Shown here piece by piece: positions 14,649 through 55,230 of a stretch of DNA of 64,000 nt. A model generated the notes under the pieces. That model did not search any database. It worked only from the letters and a program-made list of their open reading frames with translations, and was not told the DNA's origin. Where the stretch lies: assembly GCF_006345805.1 (NCBI RefSeq), contig NC_042999.1, positions 36,084,001-36,148,000 on the forward strand. Reading direction: 5' to 3'. The position numbers and the translations under genes are program-made. This DNA comes from Octopus sinensis. Its lineage: Eukaryota. The first letter of the stretch is position 1, and each line of letters opens with the position of its first letter.

Positions 14649-14857
14649 TTACTGTTGCTCTACTTTAGCTCTTTTAGCGAGGCAATTTCCCCCTTCCATG
14701 TGTTTATCGAGGTTCTTAGGAGTCACAAACCCTTCTCCGCAGTGAGGGCATTCATTCCTGGACTTGAGCATATGGATTTGTGATTTCATGTGGCGATTCA
14801 GATCTGACTGAGTTACACCTTTGTAATTGCACAGCTTACAGCAGAATTCACGAATAC
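14649..14857 (-). CDS. Zinc-finger gene terminal coding exon (ZF10, ZF11, stop)
   Basis: Acceptor ctgtgttctgcag|GT ATT CGT (phase 1). Encodes GIREFCCKLCNYKGVTQSDLNRHMKSQIH..CPHCGEGFVTPKNLDKHMEGGNC..VEQQ. TAA at 14649-14651. Confidence 0.92.
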
Positions 14858-15187: not shown

Positions 15188-18091
15188 TTAATATATCTCT
15201 GACAACATTTTAACATTTTTTGTAAGATGATTGTGCATGAATCTGTATTTCGTCAGCAGAACACAGCTGGTTTGCAATGTGGCCAAATGAATATTGTCTT
15301 CTTGATACATTATTGTTATTACTGTTGTGTTATACCAGACCAGTCTTGAATGAATAGAGTGCCAACTTTGACTATTCCATCTTTTTACAGACCTATCTCA
15401 GATTACATCATCCTATATGACCCTCCATCTGATTGTAAGGAATTTGTAATTTATCTGTCAAGAAAGCCATCTCTAGCTACAAAAGCATTCAAATTGAGAG
15501 CGTTATACCAGGAGTATAAAATGTTGTATGGAACAAAAACAGCTAGGAAATTAGAATATAAAATCAGATGGCATGGACTATGTATATAAAAAAAAACAGC
15601 CTTTAGTAGCAACTGGGTAGACCAGTGTTTCTCAAACTTTAACTATTGTCTCTTTTATTTTACTAATGCTTTCTCAATACCCCACTTGCTACATCACTAT
15701 CATTATTGTTTTAATGTCCACTTTTATATATGCTTGCATGGGTCAGACAGAATTCATTAAAGTAGATTTTCTACAGCCAAATGCCCCTCCTGGCACTATC
15801 CTTATTTGTAATAATTACCCATAATCGAATGAATTTTCATGTAAGAAAGGAAACAAATGACACTGCTTACATGACGGTGACACTCATTTACAACTAGAGT
15901 GTGATGTCAAGACAAGGAGACACACACAACACAGATATAGATAGATAGATAGTTAGATAGAGAGGACACAGACACACACATTGATATATATGGCTTGACT
16001 GTGTGGATAAGAAATTTCCTTTAAAGCACATGGCTTTAGGTACAATCCTACTGAGCAGCCTGTCAGTCAAATATCTTCTACTTTAGCCCCAGGCTGAACA
16101 ATGCTATGTGATTGAATTTGCCAGATGGAAACTGTACAAAGCTTTTCATACGTGTGTGTGTGTGTGGTATTTCGTGAATGTTTATATCACATGAAAAATC
16201 CCTGAGCTACAGTTGATGTTGTCTGTTGCAATTTCTCTGTCAACAAACTATACACAACTATGTGCTTTTAAAGATGTGTGGAAAAAAAATTTTTTTAATT
16301 CTTGTTCATTAACTCATGTTTTAAAATTTATTTTAAAACACTATGCCTAATGATCTTGCAAGTTTGAAATGATTACACTCTCTCTCACAAGATTCTAATA
16401 AAACTGAAATATGTCCATTACTATCACTCTCCTGTCATCAAAGATCATATTTTTACCTCAAGTATGAAAATTTATAAGTTTCTATGAAATTAATAATTAA
16501 GTTCTTGAAATTATCTCCCCCTCTTTTTGACAGCCATTAACAATTACTACTAAGTTTTTGTTTCCTTTCTCTAATTATGAGGGAAATTCCAATTATTTGA
16601 AGTCATTCATTGCATTAAGAAGGACATTCACCCATAGAAACCATGCCAAATCAGATTGGAACCTTGTGCAGCTCTCCAGCTTACTAGTTTCAGTCTAACT
16701 GTCTAACCCATGCCAGCATGAAAAGCAGACACTAAAAGACGATGATTCTTGTACACATCATTCTGGACATCAACACCTACCTGATTTATTTAAATTTATA
16801 TCACTAAGTTACACACACACACGATAGGCTTCTTTTAGCTTCCATCGACCTAATCCACTCACAAGGCTTTGGTTGGCCTGGGACTATAGTAGAGGAACTA
16901 AACCTAAAACCAAGTGGTTGGAAAGCAAACATCTAACCTAAACAACTGTTCATATACATCATCATCATTTTATATCTGTTTTCCATGCTGTTGTGAGCCT
17001 GACAGCTCGACAATATCTAAATCAGTTCTTATTGAAGTTATAACTCCCCTAGACAGGTTGGAGGACCACATCTTGCTCAGATGTCAGAGTTTTGTCATGG
17101 TTTCGGCAGCTGGATGACCTTCCTAACAAAACAACTTTACAGAGTGTACATGAAGGTGGGGGGAGTGCTTTTTTTTTTTCTGTAGCACCAACACTAAAGA
17201 GGTTGTCATGTCCTTGGCAAGAATAAAGAGGTTTTTTTTTGGTTTGGTGCTGTCTGTTTGTTTCGCCTTATTCATGTTTTTTTTTAAACAGTTTTTTAAA
17301 AACATTTTGTTCAATGTCTGATTATGACAACCAAGACCTTTACAAGGCTTCCAAGACTGATAGGAGAAAAGGGGCAGAAGAAAGCACAACTGATGAGTCA
17401 TGAAGTAGAAAGACATCGAGTTACTCCCAGGGCAGAAGGATGACCTGAATACTTGCAACAAAAGAACCTTAGGGAGCAGGCAGTGATGGTAAAGAAGATG
17501 ACAGACTATAGATATACCACCCTAAAATAGGAGCAAACTGCCACAGTTTCCCTCTAATTTTACTCACAAGGTTTGGGTGAACCTGAGGCTAGGTTAGAGA
17601 CACTAAGCCAAAAGAGCTGTGCAATACGATTGAGTCTAAAACCACATGTTTGTGAAGCACTTAATGAGATAGCATAACCTGACTTACAGAAGGAAGATAG
17701 GATAAATAAAAGAATATGAAATACCTTGGTGGCGCATCATGTGCACTTTTAACTGGCTATTGGTGCGTGCATAGTAATCACAGAATTTACACTTGTATGG
17801 CCGGATATCTGAAAGTACAGTGAAGTTATTTGAATGTTAGGTGGTTAATAGGCAGAAATGATACAGTATTGACGCTGCTTCAGTGGTAGCAAGATGAAAC
17901 AACAAACTGATCAGGCATGAAAGTTAAATCACACATTAACTGTACATGATAATTCCAGACCTCTACATCAAAAGTGTGTGTGTGTGTGTGTGTATGTGTG
18001 TGTAATTCAGTTTTAATGGTGAAATTTTCAAGTAAGAAGTCACTTTTAATATTAAATATATGTCTCATTGTCATTGTTTTAATGCCCACTC

Positions 18092-20306: not shown

Positions 20307-20706
20307 TCTTTATATATAAAAGAGAGGTTGTGTGTCTGTCTCCTACGATTTAGATTCCTAACTACTCCCACATTTTGCAGTGGAGTTTAACCAAAACTGG
20401 GTATCTTATAGTCGTGATTCATATCGAGCCCTTCTGGGTATTAGCGCGCGTCTACGATGAGTCTACCATTTAAAAAAAAATTTACCATCATTTTTTTCCA
20501 TTTTAATGCATTTTTTCCGCTATTATATAAGGGAAGTAACTCTCTAAAAATGTCTACGATGAGTCAACGATTTAAAAAAAAAAATTACCATAATTTTTTT
20601 TCCATTTTTAATGCATTTTTTTGCTATTTTTTGGCTATAACTCTCTAAAAATGCTTATATAGTTATTTCCCTTACAAACCCGAGCAACGCCGGACGATAC
20701 TGCTAG
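20307..20706 (+). mobile_element. Non-autonomous Helitron (400 bp) with a 102-bp internal tandem duplication
   Basis: A|TCTTTATATATAAAAG at the 5' end. GC hairpin CCG(A)GC-AAC-GCCGG at 20680-20693, 9 nt before CTAG|T (20703-20706). No TSD, inserted between A and T. Confidence 0.85.
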
Positions 20707-25698: not shown

Positions 25699-25791
25699 CC
25701 GTTTTAGGAACTTGTTTTGTTACATCTAGGGCATATGTATATCCTTCCAAGGTCATCTCCCCTTGTCTGTTCTGAATCGCACCAGTCTCAA
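25699..25791 (-). CDS. Candidate alternative exon (93-nt phase 1-1 cassette, or terminal exon to TAA at 25670)
   Basis: Pyrimidine-rich acceptor cccatcttttttcacttgtcag|TT GAG and donor ACG G|gtgagg. Open in the phase required by the flanking exons, within a repeat-poor island. No homology evidence. Confidence 0.35.
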
Positions 25792-34169: not shown

Positions 34170-34318
34170 CTTCGTGGAAATCCATGTGTCGGTTGATATC
34201 GGAGTAGGAAAGGAAATCTTTGCCACAAAAGATGCACCTGTACACAGCTCGTCCATCGGGCAGTAGAGTGGGCTTGCAAACCTTTTCTCTGTCAACAGGA
34301 GAATTCACAACATGTAAC
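34170..34318 (-). CDS. Zinc-finger gene exon (ZF9)
   Basis: Acceptor ccttttccag|G TTA CAT (phase 2 completes AGG). Encodes YRCIFCGKDFLSYSDINRHMDFHE. Donor GAA G|gtaagc (phase 1). 149 nt. Confidence 0.93.
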
Positions 34319-42223: not shown

Positions 42224-42544
42224 AATGGGCAGCAATAATGTTCATGTCCTACAGTTTTGCAGTTTCAACATGCAAATACTAGTGGAGTAAAGTATTTTTA
42301 CTTGAAAACAAGCAAGAGTTGGTGTCAGGAGAGGCATTTGGCCACAGAACATACTAACTGAAGAAATCTTGTCAAACCATACCAGCATGGGAAAAGCAGG
42401 TATAAAAACGATGAAGATGAGGACTTAAAAACTTAAACAACAAAACAGAATTCTGACAAGTCAACTACATTTGGACAAACAGAATATTCCTCAAGATGGT
42501 TTCTCTTACAAAACACAACAATATAAAAAAAATACGTAGCTCAC

Positions 42545-45120
42545 CTGGAGTGTGTTCTGGAAAGTGAAGTTAATTTGCGTCCATCAGCTAAAACAGAATT
42601 CCGAATACTATCTGGTGAGAGTGGAGCATGCCACTGGACACGTGGAAGTCCAACCAGGCTTTCCTCAGGGGATGGACATTGGGATGTTCCTGTAAGGGAA
42701 GTGGATGTTGCCAGAGATAATGGATCACTGGCAGTAGAAAGACCGAGTGGAATATTGACAATAGGTGAACCAGTGAGGGCCTGCGACACGGCTGGATTTA
42801 ATAACTGAGTAGCAGCCAAGAAAGAGGCAGCTGCCTGAGCAGGTAATGATGGTGTTCCCAAAACCATAGAGTTACACGTTATTGGTCCCATTGAGGGCAT
42901 ACCCGACAACATACTGCTCTGAGTACTGAACAGGCTTTGCCCCATACAAGATGGTGCCATTACCATTTCTGGGTCACTGTCACCCACTATCTGTTGCAAT
43001 GCAATTGAATGAGGAGAAGGTGTGAGAGGCAGTGGCGGAGCGAGAGAAGAAGGATTGGTGTGATGTGATTGTTGTTGAACAGCAGCAGTGTTATGTGGTA
43101 ATGGCGGTGGCGGTGGCGGAGGGGGAAGTGGTGGTGGCGGGGGTAATGGCGGTGGAATTCCTTGCCTGGAGGACTGGCAGTTCTGTACTTTGTATGTCAA
43201 AGATGCTTTCCGCCTGGATTTAAGCAAGAAACTGTCTTTTTTATTTTGAGGTAAGAGACACCGTTTGGGTGCAGCTATGATTTCCCGGCCACCAACAGCA
43301 ATTACACTGTCGTCACCATTATCTGAGGTATTTTCTGACCAGTTACCTTCAGAGAGTCCATTAGTGTGGTGTGGGTCAGACACCATATCTTCTATCTCGG
43401 CTGGAGGTTCGGACGGCAATACAACGGTCACATCCTCTTTAATCCCTTCCTTCTTCAAGATCTCCTTAGCATTTAATTTCTCCTTCTCCTGCTCTTCCTC
43501 TTCCTGTCTCAGCTGCTGAGATTCTTTGTCGCTATTTGAGTATTGAGTACTGCAGATGGCAGTGTCATTGGTAGCATATTTCAGATCTGAGTTACCATGA
43601 CTAAGCATGGGATGTTGGTTTTCGCCAACACCAAGCTCTTGGGAAGCTGAGGACATGTCAACACCAATGCCATCAGCATCGGTCTGTTCTTGAAGTCGAT
43701 TCAAGTAACCAAGTCTAATGGAAGACTTCAAGCTAGCAAGGATTGCACGTTTCCTCACTTTCCTAACATAGTCCAATGGGTAGCTATCACTATGGAAACG
43801 CATAATGTGCTGACGTAAGTTACGGTATTCGCTGAAACCTTTGCCACATTCTTTGCAATAGCATGGCTTATAGCCAGTATGAATCCTCTCATGACGTTGT
43901 AAGGAGAAAAACCTTGTAAACGATTTTCTGCAATATAAACAAACATAACAGCCATTAATCTTTTGATATGAACAACTAAAATCTCTAGAAGGTAACCCTG
44001 CCGATGATAGGTTAACATTAGTTTGGTAAAGGTTATTAGAAGAGGAGTCGACCAATGGGGGCTCCTTGGAAGAGTCTCTTTCGAGAACTGGCTCCTTAAA
44101 TTCAGTATTAAGTGACAATGTTTCATTTGTTTCTTCTGTAGGCAAAGGAGCAGTTTGGCTAATGGGGTTGGGGTTGTGAAAAGGTTCTCCCTGGTCAACC
44201 TGAACAGTGTTTCTTGAGGAGGGTAGTCGATGTCTTCGGGAATGGCGAAGCAGCTGAGCTTTGAAGCGAAAGTTGTTGCCACAGATCCCACACTGATAGG
44301 TGACCAGATGCCGTTCGTAGTGCAAAGACATGTGGCACTGGAGCTTACTAAGAAAATTGAACAATTTGCCACAGAGGTAGCACTTATATAGAGATGTCTT
44401 CAGGCCATTTTCTAAGTTTACACCATCAATTCTTGTGGCAATAATAGTCTCATTTTTAATACTAATTCGATTTTTCCGGAACGGAGATTCTGTGGAAATC
44501 ACAAGATCCTCCGACTTTTTATTTGAAAGAGAAGCAGCTGGTTTGCTGCCTTCCCGTACAGGAAATACAGGGGTGGCTGATGATGATGTAGTGGTACTGG
44601 GTACAAAATAAGCTGGTGGGGATTGCTGGTGAGGGGGTGGAGGATGAGAAGAATGAGAAGATTCAAAATTTGATAGCTTTGCTTCAGCCATAGCCTCAGT
44701 GATTTTCTGGTCATTTAAACCAAGGCTTTTAGCAAGCTCCAACTCTGCTTTAAAAGTGGTGGAGGGCTTTACAGCTGTTATGTCATCTGTTCTGACAAAG
44801 CTGTTATTGTTGCTGCTTCCACTCGGATTTTGTGTCGGTGTGAGAATTTCTGAAGTTTTGCCTTCACTTAGTAAATCTTTATCTTCCTGCATTTCACCAT
44901 TGTCAAGATCTGTTATGTGAACAGGGCTGTGTTGCATTGTTAAATCTAGAGTCTCTTTCTCCTGAGTTTTATCATGTAGATGAAAGGTTTTTATTTGAGC
45001 CCGAGTTTTCAGGCGGAGGTAACGCTCTTCCAGACCTTGGCTCAGCTCTACGTTGACGCCATGTGCCACCTTCTTATGATACAGCATGCTTCCTTTTGCT
45101 TTGAAAGCTTTATTGCAGAC
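42545..45120 (-). CDS. Zinc-finger gene large exon (end of ZF4, ZF5-ZF8, polyproline and low-complexity regions)
   Basis: Acceptor tttttttcag|GTC TGC at 45120 gives VCNKAFKAKGSMLYHKKVAH. The 2576-nt exon is open throughout and contains CYLC..HMSLH, CGIC..HSRRH, CLYC..HERIHTGYKP and CKEC..HIMRFH. Donor TCC AG|gtgagc (phase 2) matches the next exon. Confidence 0.95.
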
Positions 45121-47636
45121 CTGAAAAAAAAAAGTTAAGAAACAATTGTTTACAACAAATTCAATACCACCATAAGTATCATAATTCTTTCACAGATACT
45201 ATATATATGTTGGTGTATAAGATGTGCCTTTTTTTATTTTTACTTTTATATGTAACTTAAAACTGCCATGTATCTAATGTGGTGACATTATGGATGGGAG
45301 ATACTGAGTATATGAATATATAATGAAATCTTAGATTTGTTTTTTTTCCCACAAAAAAAGCAAGGGTTTGTCCCATGCAAGAGTGCATCTTATAATGGTA
45401 TACATTTATAGAGGTAAAATCAGTTATAAAAATAAGAAAGATGAGTTAAAGGTCAATACATGATGAACATTTAATATATTTACACAGGATTTGAGGCAAA
45501 TAGAGAATATTAATTTGAAATGTTTACATTCTTGAAAAGTTTTGGGTTAGATAACGTAATGGCTAAAGGATTAGACATCATTAAATCCAAGTTGTTCCTA
45601 AAGTTGCAGATATGTCTATAGGCACTGGTATGGATGTGAAAGCTGCAGGTATGGTAGTGTATAAGAAGTTCACTTTGCAATGTTGTTGTTTCAGGTTCAA
45701 TCCCACAGTATGGCACATTGGGCAAGTTATGGCCTCAGGCCAACTAGTGCATTAATATGAGTGCAATTTGAAATAAGGAAAATTCAAATTGCAAACAGAG
45801 TAACTCCAGTACATTAATACTTCTTCCTATTCTTCATTGCAGGCAAATGATGGGTTCCAAGTAGAAATAATATACCATTAGTGAGTTCTTTATGAAGGAG
45901 GAGGGTATAGGCTGTTCAACAGCCACAGAAGGCTACAGATTGTTTATAGAGAAAACACTACTGATAAAAGAATGTGCACAGGTGGATAAAGTTTAAAAAA
46001 GGGGAAACCACACACATCTTTAAAAACAAATCTATCAACAATTTGAACAACCTATATCAGTTAATAAAAAGTTATGACCATTTTTTCATTAATCTCAGTT
46101 CAACCTTCATATCATACTATGTATATGCATGCTGAGGACTCACCTGTCATAAATACCAGATGAGAGTTCCACAACTTCTTATCAGGCAACTTGCTCTGAT
46201 GATTTATTTATAGTGATCAAATGTTTGTAATTTACATTAGCTCACTCTCTTTCCATCAAATCGACATTGCCTGTACAGGTGCACAGTGTGCCACACAACG
46301 CATCAGTTGTCGAAGTGATCACAGAACAATGTGAAATGAAGTGTTTTGCTCAAGGATATGATACACTGTCCAGCCCAGGAATCGAAACTACGATCTCATG
46401 ACTAAGTGCAATACCCTAATCATTAGGTCACATGCCCTTACTCATATATGTGTGCACATATGCACACACACATACACACACGCACATATATACACACTCA
46501 CTGTCATGCATGCATGTACACACATCATTCTTTTATTGTCTTGCCAGCACAATCGTGTGGGAAGGCAATGCAATGCAATGACTATCTTAATGCAGTATAT
46601 GTTAAGATTTAAGGATTCAGTTACAACTATTTCCCTTCTAAGTTGTCACTGCTCTCTCTTTCTCTGCATCTGTTATGTTTATTCAAGGGTTATGCAAATT
46701 TCTAAGTTCAGAAGTGATGATGGTAGTGACAGGGGTTGCATTATATTTGATATGGCATTGTTTTCAAGTAAACACAGTTCTTTTAACCATGGACTTCAAA
46801 CACTTTCACATACAATATATTTATATTACCATTTCATGCTAGTGCAGTCACCTTTCCTATACACATCATAAAATGGGGGAACATACATAGTCATTTGATG
46901 TACTAGAAATAACAGACAAATATCTCTCAAATCACTCTACAATCTCAGAAAATTTTTTTTTTTAATTAGAGGAACATGTTGGGTTATCTAATGTGATAAA
47001 TTGGTAGATAAGACAGGATGGCTATGACTGGAAGGAGTTTGATTGAAGGTCTGTTCAACTAAGAATGACCTGGGGTCCAAACAACAACAACAAAAGCAGT
47101 CAATCAAGCCAATGGGAGAGCTCTTTTCTGATCATCTGACATACTAAAAATATTTATTTATAAAATCACTCAAATCTGACCTTGCTATCTTAAAAAAAAA
47201 GGATACATTACACAGTATCCTCTTACATACACCATATATATGCAAAGAGATGGTCACAGCTGGAATACCTTTGATCATTTAAGCCTAACATGGGACAAAA
47301 GAACAACAACCAATGTCATTAATGCCTAGTTACTTTCTGACTAATTGAAAAGTTTCATGTAAAATTCTACAGCAGTTTCAATGGATCATAAACTAATTTA
47401 CTCAAACTTTAACAATTTCTCTCATTAACCTCCCTCGTCAGTCGTCAACATACATCCTCTATGTGTGTGTGTGTTTCATGTCCAGTTTTGTATGCTTGCA
47501 ACAGTTGAATGGAGTTTACTGAGGAAGTTTTTTTACAGCAAGATATCCTTCCTGTCACTAACTCTAACTTGTTTCCAAGCAAGGTAATATTTCTCCATGT
47601 CCAGATATACTTTCACAGAAAATTGGGTATGAATCT

Positions 47637-47746
47637 CATCATCATCATCATCGTTTAACGTCCGATCTGGCAGTGTTTCTACAGTTGGATGCCCTTCCTA
47701 ACGCCAACCACTCCGTGAGTGTAGTGGGTGCTTTTTACGTGCCACC
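47637..47746 (-). mobile_element. RTE 3'UTR fragment, internally deleted
   Basis: The reverse complement matches 42035-42116 at 80/82 nt, then jumps directly to cggacgttaaac(gat)n. Confidence 0.85.
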
Positions 47747-48479
47747 ACGCCAAATACACAGATTCACATAGAATTCTCACATGATGAGCTTCTTTCACTT
47801 TCTGAGTACCAAATCCACTCACAAGGTTTTAGTCAACCTGGGACTCTTGCAGAAGGCACTTGCTTAAGGTACCATGCAGTGAAACTGAACCCAAAACCAC
47901 GTGGCTGGGAAACAAACTGTAAAGTTCCAGTCAAATTGGACTTTACAATAAATATAACTTTACATTCAGCATTGAATCACCTAATCGGTTAAATGTTCCA
48001 GTGCTATCATTAAACCATCTTTAAATTAACCTTAACGCATACACACTCATGTATAACACACACACATACATGCAAAAGCACATTAAAAAGAATGAGTGGG
48101 ATCCTTTATTGGCAAGAAATATAACAGTTCCTGGAAATTTTTCTACCCCCACAACATTCTAACCACACCCATTATTCTATCATTAGCCGTTTCCAGGTCT
48201 AATTATATCACATACATAGCAATATTTATCTAATATTTCAAGCAAGTTCTCCATTGCAGTTCATGATTTTTCAGTTTATTTTGCAGTGTTAGCTACATGA
48301 ATGTATCTAGTTAACTTCTCAGTCTGCTGAAAAATCCCCATTCTTACTGAATCCTTTTCTACTTAATTTACTGCAAACTGCACAAAGACATCTTTTTCTT
48401 GTTAACAACTCCCTCTCTCTCTTTCGGAGAGGCACTGAGCAGCTATACGCACACATACACACACGGCAGTAACTTCCAC

Positions 48480-48615
48480 CTACCGAATTCAATCACAAAG
48501 CTCCGGTCGGCTCGGGGCTATAGTGGAAGACACCTACCCAAAGTGCCACGCAGTGGGACTGAACCCGAAACCATGTAGCTAGGAAGCAAGCTCCCTAACC
48601 ACACAGCCATGCCCG
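48480..48615 (-). mobile_element. SINE family B head fragment
   Basis: gtgccacgcagtgggactgaacccgaaacc...accacacagccatgcc. Confidence 0.75.
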
Positions 48616-48818
48616 CATTTAGATATTGATTTTGTTCATGCCCTTTTCTCAAATGTATCAGCAATGTAAAGGAAAACGGTTACAAATAAGATTTAAATGA
48701 TGTTTAGATGTCAAGTGTGGAGAGAGAGAGAGAGAGAGAGAAGAGAGGAAAAGGAGGAAGTGAGGGAAAGAGCAAGAGAGGAAGGGAGAGAAAAGATTAG
48801 TTAAAGAACTGAACACAC

Positions 48819-49484
48819 CTCACACTGAAATGGCTTTTCTCCAGAATGAACCATCAAATGTCTTTTCAAGTCACTAGGTTTGGGAAACACCTTGCCACAT
48901 TGGCGACATGAGCGCCGGGACAGTATTGATTTACGGCGCCCTGGCCCTCTCGGTCTTCCGCGTGTGGCATGTTCCGTTGGTAAGGATGTTTTCCACATCA
49001 CAGAGTTCATACTACTCTCTGTATTTGCATCGTTACCATCTTCTTTTACTGGACATGAATAATTGATAATCGCCTGTGACACATGGGGGGGTCTACCCCG
49101 AGGTCGTGTACCTAGAGCTGACCGCCGGTTTGCAAGTCTTGATTTGGTATGTTTACTTGATACTCCGGCAGAAGCAGTGCTGGCTTCTGCATCGGGGACG
49201 GCAGATAAATAAGCATTGTTAGATTTTTTCCTTAACGTCAAGCGGCTTGTCTTTGAACTGGAACCTTGTTTACAAGACTTCAATAGACTTGATGTTAACG
49301 AACTCGACTTGTTTTCCAGCTGGTTGTCCAGACCAGTTTTAGCTCGAAGCCGTCGCGTTTTCCACTCTTTGGCAAACTCCGAAGACTTTTTGGCACCAGG
49401 ATTAAAACCTTCGGAAACGCTGTGATGTTTGATATATTGGTGATACTGTAAGCTGCGTTTGGCCTTGAAAGATTTCTTACATAC
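48819..49484 (-). CDS. Zinc-finger gene exon (end of ZF2, two AT-hook-like motifs, ZF3, start of ZF4)
   Basis: Acceptor tttgcttttgcag|GTA TGT and donor TGT GAG|gtgtgt. 666 nt, phase 0-0. It completes CE|VCKKSFKAKRSLQYHQYIKH and contains RPRGRPP, RGRPRGPGRRK and CRQCGKVFPKPSDLKRHLMVHSGEKPFQCE. Confidence 0.95.
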
Positions 49485-50813
49485 CTGCAAAAGCAAATTT
49501 CACATCAACATTAAAACAATTTGCTTATTCTTTCAGATAAACTGATGCATATCGACTAAAATTACCAATTAGTATCAAAACATTCAACTTAAAACTCTTG
49601 CTACCACTTTATAAACATTATGGAATGCTAGTTTTAATATTTCTATATTTCTTCACTGGATATAACTATCTAATTTCTTACAGGTAAAAAAAAAAAGAAA
49701 TACTATACAGGGTATGTCTTCTCTGTAGGCAATGAGCCTCTCACATACGAAGGGTCTCTATGGTAATTATAAAAAATAGTTATAAATTAAGGTATATTTT
49801 GCTATTCCTTTGCTTCCTACTTTAAAATATGCTTTTCCAAGTAAAAAAAAAAATGTGTATTCAGGAGGCTAGCAGCTTTTGGAAGAGTTTTTACACCAGA
49901 ATATTATCTAGCTGAAGGTTCAAATGGTTTGATGTTATCAGATTGTCAGCTTCACTATATGAAATCTAGAACAGTGAATTAGAAAACTCTAACTCTGTTA
50001 CAGTTCATGGATTCAATTCATCACTGTGCAGGTTAAACACAGAAGTTGAGGTTAACAGTCTTCTAAATGCTTATTATTCAATTAATGTCTCTTAGAAAAA
50101 GAAACGCATTAGTTATAACACTCCATATTTAGCTTCGTATTCAGGCTGACAATATGCTCTCATAGAGAAATGTTCCTGATATTATAATATTATAACACAT
50201 CTTTCCATGGTTAATCTTTGATGATAATAATTATATATAAAAACAAAACAAAAAAAAAACCACACCTATTACTTTTATTGTTGTCTACAACACATTTACA
50301 TAAATGTTTTTCATAAAATTGCAATCCTAATCAGATGTAAATAACTATTTGCATTTAATTATTGGTCACAAAAAATGAAAAAAGCAAAAAAAATGACCAT
50401 GTCACTTATATAAATGAATTACAGAGATGAAAGACAAAGTGTTAATACTGGTAGGATATGTACTCAGAACAATGAAGTATCAAAGCTTAGCCGATATTAA
50501 ATAAACTACTAAAGAAGCTCCATTAATGTCTGTCATTACACTTTAAATATGCACTTGTTTCATAGCATTTTGTTTTGTTTTGAGGGAAAATGCTTGATAT
50601 AAAGACAGTAGTTGTCCAAACATCCTTATAATCACTCTTTGTATTAACTTTAACATGGTTAGTACTAATTAGTAAAATTCTTAACTGAATAACAACAATA
50701 AATTCATCTGAAAAATTACATTGAGGGATCCTCTTCTTTGCATCACTGTTGTCACAAGCAAGTGACTTTTATTGGGAAGAGCAAAGAAAATGAAAACTCA
50801 TTACCAGTTTATG

Positions 50814-51061
50814 CCGGCACGTAAAATGCACCAATCCGACCGTGGCCGATGCCAGCCTCGCCTGGCTCCAGTGCAGGTGGCACGTAAAAAGCACCCACTA
50901 CACTCGCGGAGTGGTTGGCATTAGGAAGGGCATCCAGCTGTAGAAACATTGCCAGATAAGACCAGAGCCTGGTGCAGCCTTCTGGCTTCCCAGATCCCCG
51001 GTTGAACCGTCCAACCCATGCTAGCATGGAGAACAGACATTAAACGATGATGATGATGATG
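50814..51061 (+). mobile_element. RTE 3'UTR fragment (two units plus tail)
   Basis: ggcacgtaaaa(t/a)gcac twice, then the same 3'UTR and (GAT)n tail. Confidence 0.85.
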
Positions 51062-52216
51062 AAGGGTTGCTAAAAAAACGTATCAATAAACACTCCTGGT
51101 ACACCCAGGCTGATTCATCAGCCCAAGTGATACAAGCTGATAGGATTTTGAGGTCAATCCATTGGTCCAATGGAACAAATGTTGTGAATGGTTGGTTTTG
51201 AAATGTAAAAGTTAATCAGAGATCGTCTTTCAGTAGATGTATCTCAATAGAAAAAATAATTTTGGTCTTTTTGGCTACACATACCGAGACACAGTGTCCC
51301 AAATGGGTTAAATTACAAACACACCAGCAATTTTCTGGAATCCTTAGTTCCACACCTATGCCAAGTGTCAAATTAACTGTTTTGTTATATTAGAAGAGGT
51401 CACAAAACAGTAATTCTGAGCTAAATTCCTAGAAGGCTGCTACCATATCATTTATAACTTTTCCACTACTCTGTGACATGCATTTGTTTATTCACTAGAA
51501 GCCTGTTATAAAGCCGGAAACATTCTTCCAACCCTTCAGCTATATAATATGAAATATTTAAAACAAGATCTAATGCTATGCACTAACCTCTTAACCATTG
51601 GGTCCCACTGAGCCTTGTCTTGAAACATTATTGTGAAAAGATTTATATTTTCATCTTTCATGCAGGAACAATGTATTCTCCACAGTAAACCTAAGTTATC
51701 TATTAACCTGCACTTGAGAGTCCCTAGGGGATTAGCATGCGGTGTTTGGTTTAGTTTTAAATATTTGTGTCTTTACAGTTAGGTGAGAGGAAGAGTGTTT
51801 CTGCCTTTATGATATGTTACTAATAAACAAATGTGTATCATGAATGCTTGGTAGTAAAAATATTATAATGGTTGTAGGAAATTTAAATATCCTCATGTAA
51901 TTACGTTTAGATTAAAAGGGGGTGCTGGACATTCAGTAGCTAGACAATCAGCTGATACCTTAATTTTCTTGACTTCACTGATAAAGAGTTAATAGGAATG
52001 CATCCAACTATAAACAAAAATATTGATACAAAAATATGCAAATGTTTGAATTTACAACAACAAAATTTCAGCCATAATAGCAATGGAAATTACAGCAACA
52101 AAAGGAATCTGTATTGAAGGTTGGTAACAATAATGGCATAATAGAGTGGTGTATGCAAGCAAAATAGAAATAATCTAAAATATTTGGGAATGATTACTGA
52201 AGAGGAACTTGCTTAA

Positions 52217-52437
52217 TCCTTTAGCATTTAAACTGGCTATATCCAGCCCAAATATTCTTCTTATTTTATGTTCAAACTGGCCATATCCAGCCTCTCACAC
52301 CTACCCAACATTTGTCATTCTAAACATAAGCAGTCATATCACTGAAATCTGAAAGCTACAAGATAATACATGAGTAGCTCAAAATAATGTGAATATATAA
52401 ACATTACATTTGACAGAATAAGCTGAATGCTAAAGGG
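52217..52437. mobile_element. Family-1 MITE
   Basis: TTAA|TCCTTTAGC ... GCTAAAGGG|TTAA, 221 bp. Confidence 0.85.
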
Positions 52438-53416
52438 TTAATGACAATTAAAGCCAACCCCAGTTTCCTTGAAGGATTAAATTTGAGAAGATTAAAGGGG
52501 CAAAAATTTATCAAGCAAAAAATTTTGTTGGAAACAAGCACTTTGACAAATATGAAATGGAAAAAAGAATTTTAAACTCCTTGTCAATAGGATCTGAATA
52601 CAGGACAGTCTTTGAAATACTTGGTGACTGGACAAGAGATGAGTTGAATAGTTAACTGATTCTCTGTACTAGTATAATGTCCACAGCAACTTGGTGAGGT
52701 TAGTATTTAGCAAGAGAAACAAGAACAAGGAGTGAGTTTTACAGGGTTAAAGTTCTGAGTAGAAAGTATTTAGTAAGAGTTTGTAGGGTGTAATGACATA
52801 GAGATGACTAACAGAGCAAAGGATAATTAGGTACTTTGGATGGAAACGGTATACAGCTTATTTGTTCAGAATAACAGAGGTTACTGTAATAAAATATACT
52901 GTAACAAAACAGGACAAAAGATGAAACAGTATGTCTGTAGGTTAGTGGCTGGAAAATGGTGAGAAAATCTTTGCCAATCAGGAAGATACCTTTTCAGATT
53001 TAGTAAATGATGATGATGATAGTGGTGGTGAGGTGATGGTGGTGATGGCAGTGGTGTGGTAGTAATAGCAGTAGTAGGAAATGTGGAATGTTGTACAACA
53101 TAATCTCAGTAAAAAAATTTTAAAGCCAGGTGAAGGCATAGTCATGTGGTAAGAAGTTTGCTTTCTAACTACATGGTTCTGTGTTCAGTCTTACTGCATG
53201 GCACTTAGGCAAGAGTCTTTTGCTATAGCCTCTGGCCAGCCAAAGCCTGTCTGTGTGTGTATATCCACTGCCACCACCATCACTTGACAACTGGTGTCGG
53301 TCTGTTTACATCCCCCAAAGTTTAAAGATTTGGCAAAAAGAGATCGATAGAATAAGTACCAGGCTTTAAAAAAGATACTGGAGTCAATTTGTTTCATTAA
53401 ACCCATTAAGGCAGTG

Positions 53417-53714
53417 TGGAGGCGCAATGGCCCAGTGGTTAGGGCAGCGGACTCGCAGTCGGAGGATAACGGTTTTTGATTCCCAGACTAGGTGTTGTGT
53501 GTGTTTATTGAGCGAAAACACCTAAAAGCTGCACAAGGCTCCAACAGGGGGTGGTGGCGACCTCTGTTGTACTCTTTCGCCCCAACTTTCTCGCACTGTT
53601 TCTTGAGTAACGCTGTGATGGACTGGCGTCCCGTCCAGCTGGGGGGGAACACATATACCATAGAAACTGGGCCCATGAACCTGGCTAGGCTTGAAAAGGA
53701 TGCATAAATAAATA
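53417..53714 (+). mobile_element. tRNA-derived SINE, family D, nested in a family-B SINE
   Basis: Head tggaggcgcaatggcccagtggttagggcagcgg, (TAAA)n tail, TSD aaggcagtg/aaggcaatg (53408-53416, 53715-53723). Confidence 0.85.
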
Positions 53715-54045
53715 AAGGCAATGCCCCAGTATGGCCACAGTCTAACAACCGAAACAAGTTAAAAAAGAGAAATCACTCCAAAAAGTAAGATAGATGAAGA
53801 AATGAAATAGCTCAACAAAACTTAGAATCTAACAATCTATAAACCAATCTTAAACCTTGCATGTAAAGTGAAAGGAGCTCAAATCAAATTAAAGAATAGC
53901 ATGTAGTAGAGAAATGAATCTGTGAACTATCAGAACTAATAACATTTCTAATAAAATCTGATAAATATTAATAACCGTTCTATTTTCTTTTAAGAAATTT
54001 AATGCTTCCTCATTATAAATAGAGTTCATAGAAAAGATAACTCAC

Positions 54046-54551
54046 CTCACAAGCAAACGGCTTTTCTCCCGTGTGCTTGCGGACATGTCGTGTTAAATCT
54101 GCTGGACTCTTCTTCACAATGCCACAGTATGGACAAGTGCGGTCCTGTGAAGACAGGCCGAAGCTTACATCCACCCCTAAGGACGATTCTGTTGATTTCT
54201 GGGCATTTAAGCGACAATTTCGTAAACTTCGTCGCAGTTGTCGTGCACCGCTTTCGGTACTTTTCGGATCACATGAAAGCAGTTTCGATTCTTGTTCACT
54301 TGTTTTCTTATCATATTTATCACGATTTTTCACATTCTTATCACAGTTTTTAGCAACAGTCTTGACAGCTTCATCAGCTAGAGAGGAACCTTCTACTATT
54401 GTATCACTATCACTGGTGTCTGCTTTTCTGAGGGAATCATCCTCATCGTCAGTAGCAGTTGGCTCTTCAACTCTCTCATTCTGGGTGGAGTTGTCTTTAG
54501 ACTTACGGCTGGTAGACTCTAAAGAACTTTGTTCTAGTGAAACACCTTCAT
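54046..54551 (-). CDS. Multi-zinc-finger gene, first visible coding exon (internal; acidic Ser-rich region, ZF1 and the start of ZF2)
   Basis: Acceptor ...ctctgttttcag|AT GAA (phase 1) and donor TGT GAG|gtgagt (phase 0). 506 nt. Encodes CPYCGIVKKSPADLTRHVRKH followed by the canonical linker TGEKPF and ACE. It has no in-frame Met, so upstream exons are required. Confidence 0.93.
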
Positions 54552-54619: not shown

Positions 54620-54651
54620 ACAACAACAACAATAATAATAATAATAATAAC

Positions 54652-54698
<47 letters not shown>

Positions 54699-55230
54699 TA
54701 ATAATCCTTTCTACTATAGGCACAAGGCCTGGATTTTTGTAGGGAGGAGGACAATTGATCACATCGACCCCAGTACTTGACTGGTATTTAATTTATTGGC
54801 CTTGAAAGGATGAAAGGCAAAGTCGACTGGTGGAATTTGAATTTAGAATGTAGTGACAGATGAAGTACCACGAAGCATTTCACCCAGCGTGCTAACAATT
54901 CTGCTACCTTGCCACCTTAATGATAATGATAATAATAATGACAAAGATAATAGTTTCTGATTTAGAGACAAGGCCAACTATTTTGAGGAGAGAGGATTAG
55001 TCAATATCATTGACTCCAGTACTTGACTAGTACTTTATTTTATTAACCCCAATAAGATGGAAGCAAAGTTGATCTTGGTGAGATCAAAACTAAGAACAAA
55101 TAAAAGCATTTGATGATGATAATACATGGTTTCAAATTTTGGCCCAAGGTTTGCAAGTTTATGGGGAGGGGGTGAGTCAATTACATCAACCCCAGTGCTC
55201 AACTGCTATTTATTTTATTGACCCTGAAAG
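54620..55230 (-). mobile_element. Array of about 3 copies of the (ATT)n-tailed SINE with a long AAT tract
   Basis: (AAT)n at about 54630-54700, a near-complete copy at 54705-54920, then further partial copies. Confidence 0.85.

What the first reader, a model, noticed from the sequence alone, without database searches (positions are those of the whole stretch)
48819..49484. AT-hook exon is a built-in swap cassette: skipping it rebuilds an intact chimeric zinc finger
Seen: both flanking introns are phase 0 and cut a finger at the same residue (GEKPF-x-CE|VC). The exon is 666 nt. Skipping it would splice PFACE onto VCNKAFKAKGSMLYHKKVAH, giving an in-frame, complete C2H2 finger while deleting one finger pair's worth of sequence and both AT-hook-like motifs. 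Inference: the gene can switch AT-hook (minor-groove) binding and finger specificity by one splicing event.
Basis: partly seen in the sequence, partly recalled or inferred. Interest (0 to 1): 0.7.

Follow-up and report, generated by a model that had tools for sequence, protein, structure and literature searches.

The report
Skippable zinc-finger exon: old duplication relic
The exon really could be skipped to leave an intact zinc finger, but this geometry is the footprint of an internal gene duplication that all molluscs checked share, and nothing found here shows the animal uses it as a splicing switch.

Summary
On the minus strand, a 666-nt exon (49484-48819) is flanked by two phase-0 introns. 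Each cuts a C2H2 finger between residues 2 and 3 of its Cys-x-x-Cys knuckle. Joining 54046 to 45120 stays in frame and gives a finger that Pfam scores as intact.

The same two intron positions occur in abalone, chiton, ark clam and surf clam orthologues, and cuttlefish relatives share both donor sites. The two finger pairs are paralogues, so one ancient tandem duplication across one intron explains the symmetry. Skipping would simply recreate the pre-duplication protein.

I recovered 25 annotated full-length orthologue proteins and none skips this exon, although other alternative events in the gene are annotated. Against a congener, the exon evolves like its neighbour exon A, and its flanking introns show no extra conservation.

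Recognition residues of the paired fingers are nearly identical, so skipping would change valency rather than specificity. The two RGRP motifs are real. One is shared with cuttlefish, and the other molluscs lack them.

No transcript from the source species was available, so a regulated isoform is not excluded. Weak splice sites on this exon are the only hint in its favour. Ordinary, low interest.

The parts
54046..54551 (-). Exon A (506 nt, enters in phase 1). It encodes an acidic/Ser-rich region, ZF1 (CPYCGIVKKSPADLTRHVRKH, 54135-54073) and the first half of the ZF2 knuckle (GEKPFACE). Donor is GAG|gtgagt.
   Evidence: A congener genomic contig L005 is 98.6% identical across it.
49485..54045 (-). 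Intron A/B, phase 0. It cuts ZF2 between C-E and V-C.
   Evidence: Same position in Haliotis, Liolophura, Tegillarca and Mactra and in cuttlefish read-through ORFs P0131 and P0178.
48819..49484 (-). Exon B, the finding (666 nt, phase 0-0). It encodes the C-terminal 20 aa of ZF2, a ~170-aa basic/Ser-rich linker, ZF3 and the first 9 aa of ZF4.
   Evidence: It is 98.05% identical to congener contig L004, against 87% in both flanking introns.
49425..49484 (-). ZF2 C-terminal part (VCKKSFKAKRSLQYHQYIKH), including its recognition helix.
49089..49100 (-). AT-hook-like core 1 (RGRP within LGTRPRGRPPHV). Kept in the congener but not in cuttlefish.
   Evidence: Pfam AT_hook scores 15.5 bits, below the 17.4 cut-off.
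48951..48962 (-). AT-hook-like core 2 (RGRP within ATRGRPRGPGRRKS), 14 residues upstream of the first Cys of ZF3. Conserved in cuttlefish as GRTRGRPRGSGRRQ.
   Evidence: No Pfam AT_hook hit was reported.
48846..48908 (-). ZF3 (CRQCGKVFPKPSDLKRHLMVH), the paralogue of ZF1.
48819..48845 (-). Linker and first half of the ZF4 knuckle (SGEKPFQCE). Donor is GAG|gtgtgt.
45121..48818 (-). Intron B/C, phase 0. It cuts ZF4 at the same residue as intron A/B cuts ZF2. It carries a SINE-like insert (~48617-48411) that is absent from the congener.
42545..45120 (-). Exon C (2576 nt). It encodes the rest of ZF4 (VCNKAFKAKGSMLYHKKVAH), the conserved VELSQGLEERYLRLK motif and four more fingers. It ends in phase 2 (CAG|gtgagc).
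34170..34318 (-). Exon D, with an internal alternative acceptor at 34288.
25699..25791 (-). 93-nt phase 1-1 optional cassette inside a finger-finger linker. Cuttlefish models either include it or skip it.
17725..17808 (-). Exon E (finger CKFCDYYARTNSQLKVHMMRH).
14649..14857 (-). Exon F coding part, with the last two fingers and the stop codon.

Best explanation
Exon B is an ordinary, normally included coding exon of a multi-C2H2 zinc-finger transcription-factor gene. The gene is conserved across molluscs and has no curated name; RefSeq auto-names include 'zinc finger protein 236-like', '628-like' and '208-like'. The source is a cephalopod, probably an octopus.

An ancestral gene had one finger pair with a phase-0 intron inside the Cys-x-x-Cys knuckle of the second finger. 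A tandem duplication ran from upstream of the first finger, across that intron, to downstream of the second finger. This created a new fusion exon, today's exon B, flanked by two copies of the intron. Identical cut points, identical phases, a length divisible by three and a rebuilt finger on skipping all follow automatically. Skipping would recreate the pre-duplication protein.

The duplication predates the split of chitons, bivalves, gastropods and cephalopods. Cephalopods later gained RGRP (AT-hook-like) motifs in the linker. The conserved one lies just N-terminal to ZF3, where it most likely acts as a minor-groove anchor that raises the affinity of the weak two-finger ZF3-ZF4 module.

Shown: exon structure, conservation of the intron positions, paralogy of the pairs, purifying selection, and lineage distribution of the RGRP motifs.
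Inferred: the duplication mechanism, constitutive inclusion, and the DNA-binding role of the RGRP motifs.
For: - Splice sites, phases and frame were verified.
- The same two knuckle introns are found elsewhere, each flanking a symmetric exon: Haliotis rufescens (504 nt), the chiton Liolophura (633 nt), Tegillarca (393 nt) and Mactra (489 nt).
- Both donors are also conserved in cuttlefish relatives, seen as read-through ORFs P0131, P0173 and P0178.
- Pair 1 and pair 2 are 56% identical within the window protein, against 33-38% to another finger pair of the same protein. Orthologous pairs are 67-68% identical across classes, against 49% between paralogous pairs. The duplication is therefore older than the mollusc classes.
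- All 25 annotated full-length orthologue proteins recovered keep the exon B homologue. They cover four Haliotis species, Mercenaria, Mya, Mactra, Tegillarca, Liolophura, Batillaria and three cuttlefish models. The same annotations record 1-31-aa alternative events elsewhere in the gene.
- Exon B is 98.05% identical to a congener, with 8 synonymous and 5 non-synonymous codon changes, against 87% in the flanking introns. Exon A behaves the same way: 98.6%, with 5 synonymous and 2 non-synonymous changes.
- There is no conservation peak in the 100 nt of intron on either side.
- RGRP motif 2 is shared with cuttlefish. The corresponding linkers of Haliotis, Tegillarca, Liolophura, Mercenaria and Pinctada have none.
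- Joint action of an AT-hook and zinc fingers is documented for ZBTB24 (PMC11780882, read).
Against: - No transcript of the source species or a congener was reachable, so inclusion in every tissue is inferred, not shown.
- Exon B has the weakest acceptor tract of the gene (11 of 20 pyrimidines, against 12-17 at the gene's other acceptors and 17 at neighbouring exons A and C). Its donor is non-consensus (gtgtgt; gtgggt in the congener). It sits between a strong donor (gtgagt) and a strong acceptor, which is the usual set-up of a skippable exon.
- It is also long at 666 nt.
- Annotated isoform sets are incomplete, and rare or tissue-restricted isoforms are often missing from them.
Confidence: 0.7

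Rival explanations
1. Exon B is a regulated cassette exon. Tissue- or stage-specific skipping toggles the protein between a two-pair form with AT-hooks and a one-pair form without them, changing which DNA sites it binds.
For: The exon is symmetric (phase 0-0) and 666 nt, and skipping gives an in-frame product with an intact chimeric finger. It has weaker splice sites than its neighbours. The gene does use alternative splicing elsewhere to alter finger spacing: the 93-nt cassette at 25791-25699 is present or absent in cuttlefish models. There is precedent in Drosophila CF2, where splice forms differ in finger number (PMC3245913).
Against: No skip isoform appears among the 25 annotated orthologue proteins, including three cuttlefish models that do carry the AT-hook. 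There is no raised conservation of flanking intron sequence. Substitution rates do not differ from those of exon A. The geometry exists in lineages without AT-hooks and is explained by duplication alone. Recognition residues of the swapped fingers are nearly the same, so a change of specificity is not expected.
Confidence: 0.12
2. Skipping happens only as low-level, unregulated splicing noise. It is tolerated because the product is in frame and equals the ancestral one-pair protein. It has no dedicated function.
For: Weak acceptor and donor on a long exon between strong competing sites. The in-frame product would escape nonsense-mediated decay (inference). No isoform is prominent enough to be annotated in relatives.
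Against: There is no direct evidence that any skipping occurs. Strong purifying selection on exon B shows that the included form is the functional one.
Confidence: 0.15
3. The 'exon' is not a real exon but a chance ORF or a decayed duplicate, and the true transcript joins A to C directly.
For: None beyond the fact that A-to-C splicing is formally possible.
Against: Exon B is 98% conserved against 87% for its introns, with dN well below dS. Homologous exons are included in every orthologue model. It has canonical AG/GT boundaries. ZF3 scores above the Pfam cut-off.
Confidence: 0.02

Closest known systems
Symmetric exons created by internal tandem duplication (exon or segment duplication as a source of repeats and sometimes of alternative splicing; general concept from my own knowledge, e.g. 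Kondrashov & Koonin 2001 and Letunic et al. 2002. See also the COE genes, where a duplicated exon became mandatory, listed as PMC2394523 by title only, not read.)
   Same: Paralogous units, identical intron position and phase on both sides, length divisible by three, and an in-frame product if the unit is left out.
   Different: Here the duplicated unit spanned an intron. The new exon is therefore a fusion of the tail of one finger and the head of the next, not a copy of a pre-existing exon. No mutually exclusive or cassette use has been shown.
Drosophila Chorion factor 2 (CF2), whose splice forms differ in the number of zinc fingers (PMC3245913, citing Hsu et al. 1992)
   Same: A C2H2 transcription factor in which a splicing choice inside the finger region adds or removes whole fingers while keeping the frame.
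   Different: CF2 isoforms are demonstrated and sex- or stage-regulated, and use an alternative 5' splice site. For the gene here no alternative transcript is known. The removed part also includes a long linker with AT-hook-like motifs.
Zinc-finger proteins that combine C2H2 fingers with an AT-hook, such as ZBTB24 (PMC11780882). PATZ1 and ZFAT are further examples from my own knowledge.
   Same: An RGRP-type motif lies next to C2H2 fingers. The AT-hook alone binds weakly and is thought to act together with the fingers.
   Different: No BTB domain was found in the part of the protein seen, and there is no detectable orthology. The motifs here lie in a linker between two finger pairs, score below Pfam's AT_hook threshold and are restricted to cephalopods.
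Mollusc orthogroup auto-named 'zinc finger protein 236-like / 628-like / 208-like' (e.g. Haliotis rufescens XP_046358785.2, Liolophura sinensis XP_064597346.1, Acanthosepion pharaonis CAE1253827.1)
   Same: Colinear architecture: ZF1-ZF2, linker, ZF3-ZF4, the VELSQGLEERYLRLK motif, central fingers, the DGRK.TSLSRTHSR motif, and four nearly invariant C-terminal fingers. Intron positions match.
   Different: Only the cephalopod members carry RGRP motifs in the linker. The first exon is outside the window; in orthologues it encodes an N-terminal RRKQ.KPQH motif.

Membership tests
C2H2 zinc finger (Pfam PF00096) | C-x2-4-C-x12-H-x3-5-H pattern, with a profile score above the curated cut-off of 25.2 bits. 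| tested here: met
   ZF3 in exon B scores 32.8 bits. Whole-peptide zf-C2H2 scores, each with two matched stretches: skip-product peptide 36.8 bits, ZF1+ZF2 36.4 bits, ZF3+ZF4 44.7 bits.
AT-hook (Pfam PF02178) | G-R-P core, usually R-G-R-P, flanked by basic residues. | tested here: met
   TRPRGRPPH at 49100-49089 and TRGRPRGPGRRK at 48962-48951. At least two RGRP arise by chance with frequency 1.5e-5. Motif 1 has no basic residues downstream.
AT-hook (Pfam PF02178) | Profile score at or above the curated cut-off (17.4 bits). | tested here: not met
   Motif 1 scores 15.5 bits. Motif 2 gave no reported hit. The profile is 13 positions long, so this is a weak test.
AT-hook (Pfam PF02178) | Binds the minor groove of AT-rich DNA. 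| not testable with these tools
   Needs EMSA, footprinting or protein-binding-microarray data.
Regulated cassette (alternative) exon | Symmetric phases, length divisible by three, and an in-frame functional product when skipped. | tested here: met
   Phase 0-0, 666 nt, intact chimeric finger.
Regulated cassette (alternative) exon | Transcripts exist both with and without the exon. | not testable with these tools
   Only genomic read-through ORFs of the congener were found (P0168, P0174). In orthologues, 0 of 25 annotated full-length proteins skip it.
Regulated cassette (alternative) exon | Raised conservation of flanking intron sequence, or unusual synonymous constraint compared with constitutive exons. 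| tested here: not met
   The first 100 nt upstream are 92% and 88% identical and the first 100 nt downstream 78% and 47%, against an 87% intron background. Synonymous change is 8 of 154 sites in exon B and 5 of 113 in exon A. This rests on a single pairwise comparison, so power is low.
Regulated cassette (alternative) exon | Splice sites weaker than those of the flanking exons. | tested here: met
   Acceptor tract 11 of 20 pyrimidines and donor gtgtgt, against 17 of 20 and gtgagt/gtgagc for exons A and C. This is a consensus count only, not a trained model.
Exon born by internal tandem duplication | The units on either side are paralogous. | tested here: met
   ZF1-ZF2 against ZF3-ZF4 is 56% identical, and both share the unusual FKAK.S..YH helix. 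Identity to another pair of the same protein is 33-38%.
Exon born by internal tandem duplication | Both flanking introns sit at the homologous position and in the same phase. | tested here: met
   C-E|V-C, phase 0, at 54046/49484 and 48819/45120.
Exon born by internal tandem duplication | The architecture is shared by orthologues, which dates the event. | tested here: met
   Haliotis, Liolophura, Tegillarca and Mactra have both introns. Cuttlefish donors are conserved. No single-pair outgroup was found, so the pre-duplication state is inferred.

The most novel reading that the evidence does not exclude
The symmetric exon may be a splicing toggle kept for more than 500 million years across molluscs. 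It would switch this transcription factor between a bivalent form (two finger pairs on a long linker, able to bridge two half-sites) and a monovalent form. Cephalopods would then have loaded the toggled segment with AT-hooks, so that the same event also turns minor-groove anchoring on or off.
Probability: 0.1. Interest if true: 0.5.

Novelty: new member of a known kind. Interest (0 to 1): 0.2.

Why it matters
If a regulated skip isoform existed, it would be a neat case of a duplication-derived exon reused to change the valency and minor-groove anchoring of a transcription factor. It would sit in an uncharacterised gene that is deeply conserved in molluscs.

As the evidence stands, the value is mainly cautionary. 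An exon whose removal rebuilds an intact repeat unit is the expected footprint of an internal duplication across an intron. It should not be read as evidence of a designed switch.

Two smaller points may interest cephalopod genomicists. The AT-hook-like motifs next to ZF3 are a cephalopod-specific gain. The gene also has an annotated 93-nt cassette that alters finger spacing elsewhere.

Tried and rejected
1. I looked for transcript-derived proteins spanning the A-B, B-C or A-C junctions with all three large protein searches. Only genomic read-through ORFs of a congener appeared: P0168 for exon B and P0174 for exon A. Hit lengths fell between about 0.55 and 1.75 times the query length, which suggests a length filter. 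If so, contigs outside the three ranges tried would have been missed.
2. The exhaustive representative search, using ZF3-ZF4 plus the conserved motif, was swamped by poly-zinc-finger proteins and gave nothing usable. Including a whole canonical finger in the query was a mistake.
3. Genomic look-ups failed for the cuttlefish, Mercenaria and Mya proteins. For cuttlefish, intron positions therefore rest on read-through ORFs only.
4. I tried to name the family through cluster members and solved structures. This gave only generic C2H2 matches and inconsistent automatic names, and no vertebrate orthologue was identified.
5. Literature searches for 'hybrid zinc finger' with alternative splicing, and for the two sequencing-run accessions, returned nothing.
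6. I searched the window for the first coding exon (N-terminal RRKQ motif) and for the tRNA-synthetase neighbour seen in Haliotis and Mactra. Neither was found within 55-64 kb.
7. I rejected the idea that exon B is a pseudo-exon because of the conservation pattern.

Full report
**What is there**

The window is AT-rich eukaryotic DNA at 31-45% G+C. The feature belongs to a gene on the minus strand.

- Exon A ends at 54046 with ...HTGEKPFACE and the donor GAG|gtgagt.
- The exon in question runs from 49484 (acceptor ttttgcag|GTA) to 48819 (donor GAG|gtgtgt). It is 666 nt and translates without a stop.
- Exon C begins at 45120 after tttttttcag with VCNKAFKAKGSMLYHKKVAH.

Both introns are phase 0 and fall between residues 2 and 3 of a Cys-x-x-Cys knuckle.

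Exon B encodes four things:
- the last 20 residues of finger ZF2;
- a basic, serine-rich linker of about 170 residues;
- finger ZF3;
- the first nine residues leading into ZF4.

Joining A directly to C gives ...GEKPFACE|VCNKAFKAKGSMLYHKKVAH. Pfam scores this as two normal C2H2 fingers at 36.8 bits. The two native pairs score 36.4 and 44.7 bits.

**The gene**

Protein searches found no identical protein. They did find clear orthologues:
- cuttlefish (Acanthosepion pharaonis, 50% identity);
- abalone;
- ark clam;
- a chiton;
- several heterodont clams.

Their automatic names are inconsistent: 'zinc finger protein 236-like', '628-like', '208-like'. Mapping the cuttlefish and chiton proteins onto the window shows that the gene continues past the apparent stop at 42541:
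- exon C, 45120-42545;
- exon D, 34318-34170;
- an optional 93-nt exon, 25791-25699;
- exon E, 17808-17725;
- exon F, 14857-14649.

The first coding exon is not in the window. In orthologues it encodes an N-terminal RRKQ.KPQH motif. From memory, this resembles the NuRD-recruiting motif of SALL, BCL11 and FOG proteins.

Two Logan contigs, from runs SRR11869391 and SRR11869384, carry exons B and A at about 98% identity. A close relative of the source species has therefore been sequenced, but both contigs are genomic. The source is a cephalopod, probably an octopus. That is an inference from the hit pattern and the repeat content.

**Why the two introns cut at the same residue**

The pairs ZF1-ZF2 and ZF3-ZF4 are paralogues.
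- They are 56% identical over 52 residues.
- They share an unusual FKAK.S..YH recognition helix.
- Each is only 33-38% identical to another finger pair of the same protein.
- Across mollusc classes, pair 1 resembles pair 1 (mean 67%) and pair 2 resembles pair 2 (68%) more than pair 1 resembles pair 2 (49%).

The duplication is therefore older than those classes.

I fetched four orthologous loci and located the junctions. Every one has both introns at the same place and phase.

| Species | Upstream junction | Downstream junction | Exon length |
|---|---|---|---|
| Haliotis rufescens | PFVCQ\|GCNK | YKCE\|VCGK | 504 nt |
| Liolophura (chiton) | FACT\|ICKR | FKCD\|ICGK | 633 nt |
| Tegillarca | FICG\|ICNR | FKCD\|ICGK | 393 nt |
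| Mactra | FQCP\|ECKN | FRCE\|LCSK | 489 nt |

In cuttlefish relatives, ORFs that read through into the intron stop being homologous right after FVCE and FKCE. This places both donors at the same spot.

The simplest history is one tandem duplication. It ran from upstream of the first finger, across the knuckle intron, to downstream of the second finger. Such an event creates one new fusion exon between two copies of the intron. Equal cut points, equal phases, a length divisible by three and an intact finger on skipping all follow automatically. The skip product would be the pre-duplication protein. I did not find an outgroup that still has a single pair, so the mechanism itself is inferred.

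**Is the exon used as a switch?**

Direct evidence could not be obtained. All three large searches returned only genomic read-through ORFs for the source lineage. The indirect evidence leans against a switch.

- *Annotated isoforms.* I recovered 25 annotated full-length orthologue proteins: four Haliotis species, Mercenaria, Mya, Mactra, Tegillarca, Liolophura, Batillaria and three cuttlefish models. None lacks the exon B homologue. The same annotations do record other alternative events in this gene. Haliotis isoforms X1 and X2 differ by 3-5 residues. The cuttlefish models differ by a 10-residue alternative acceptor in exon D and by the 31-residue cassette.
- *Substitution pattern.* Against the congener, exon B is 98.05% identical, while both flanking introns are 87% identical. 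It shows 8 synonymous and 5 non-synonymous codon changes. Exon A shows the same pattern: 98.6%, with 5 synonymous and 2 non-synonymous changes. Exon B is thus a constrained coding exon with no special signature.
- *Flanking introns.* The 100 nt of intron on each side are no better conserved than background. The downstream side is worse, because of a GA microsatellite. This is one pairwise comparison, so power is low.

One feature points the other way. Exon B has the poorest acceptor tract in the gene (11 of 20 pyrimidines) and a non-consensus donor (gtgtgt here, gtgggt in the congener). The competing A donor and C acceptor are strong.

**What skipping would do**

The recognition helix of the chimeric finger is entirely ZF4's. 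Only the first β-strand comes from ZF2, and it differs by one residue (A for Q). Reading helix positions -1, 2, 3 and 6 from the sequence gives:

| Finger | -1 | 2 | 3 | 6 |
|---|---|---|---|---|
| ZF1 | S | A | D | R |
| ZF3 | K | S | D | R |
| ZF2 | A | R | S | Y |
| ZF4 | A | G | S | Y |

The two pairs carry nearly the same reading heads. Skipping would therefore reduce two similar modules on a long tether to one module and remove the RGRP motifs. That is a change of valency and affinity, not of specificity.

**The AT-hook-like motifs**

Two RGRP cores are present, which chance would give with frequency 1.5e-5.
- The second (ATRGRPRGPGRRKS) ends a few residues before ZF3. It is conserved in cuttlefish as GRTRGRPRGSGRRQ.
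- The first is kept in the congener but not in cuttlefish.
- Pfam's short AT_hook profile scores the first at 15.5 bits, below its 17.4 cut-off, and reports nothing for the second.
- The linkers of abalone, ark clam, chiton, Mercenaria and pearl oyster have no such motif.

The motifs are therefore a cephalopod gain, added to an architecture that already existed. By analogy with ZBTB24, a weak AT-hook is thought to act jointly with fingers (PMC11780882). The likeliest role here is a minor-groove anchor for the ZF3-ZF4 module. This is inferred and untested.

**Comparison with known systems**

Splice forms that differ in finger number are known, for example in Drosophila CF2 (PMC3245913). Symmetric exons born from internal duplication are a textbook phenomenon. 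This case is a new, uncharacterised example of those kinds and not a new kind.

**Verdict**

Interest is low.

The decisive test is a count of the 54046^45120 junction in multi-tissue RNA data.

Noticed in passing
window 25699-25791 (minus strand): A 93-nt phase 1-1 exon (VETGAIQNRQGEMTLEGYTYALDVTKQVPKT) lies inside the short HE|DIRPYKC linker between two C-terminal fingers. Cuttlefish gene models include it (P0001, P0129) or skip it (P0130). It is an annotated alternative cassette that would lengthen a finger-finger linker by 31 residues, and it is a better candidate for a splicing switch in this gene than exon B.
   Followed up: partly
window 34170-34318 (minus strand), internal acceptor at 34288: Exon D has an internal AG (ttgacag|AGA) that would remove LHVVNSPVDR in frame. 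Cuttlefish models P0001 and P0129 differ by exactly this segment, and Haliotis isoforms X1 and X2 differ by 5 residues at the same junction.
   Followed up: partly
window ~48411-48617 and 48720-48745: The intron just downstream of exon B holds a SINE-like element that is absent from the congener contig L004 (a gap in the alignment), and a GA microsatellite next to the donor.
   Followed up: partly
window exons A and B against L005 and L004: Synonymous divergence in both exons is about 0.045-0.05. Divergence of the adjacent introns is about 0.13, well over twice as much. The cause was not examined; it could be alignment noise in repeats or a general constraint on coding RNA in cephalopods.
   Followed up: no
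L001 (Haliotis rufescens) 20357-20470: The acceptor and first codons of the exon C homologue (…GATCTGTGRCAG|GTGTGTGGRAAATG…) occur as several tandem copies just upstream of the real acceptor.
   Followed up: no
L001 1-1755 and L006 1-5: In both abalone and surf clam the divergent upstream neighbour is a class II aminoacyl-tRNA synthetase gene, so the pairing is conserved. No match to it was found in the window.
   Followed up: partly
window 54620-54700: A long (ATT)n/(GTT)n microsatellite lies directly upstream of the exon A acceptor.
   Followed up: no
P0182, P0190-P0195: Short genomic ORFs from unnamed Logan and ENA contigs carry the same ...LSQGLEERYLRLKTRSAM motif. They begin at the same knuckle position (…Q|YCNKGFKQPGS…, …Q|VCHKCFKQKGS…). 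P0182 carries the FKQKGSLLYH helix also seen in the caenogastropod Batillaria protein P0117. The organisms behind P0190-P0195 were not identified.
   Followed up: no
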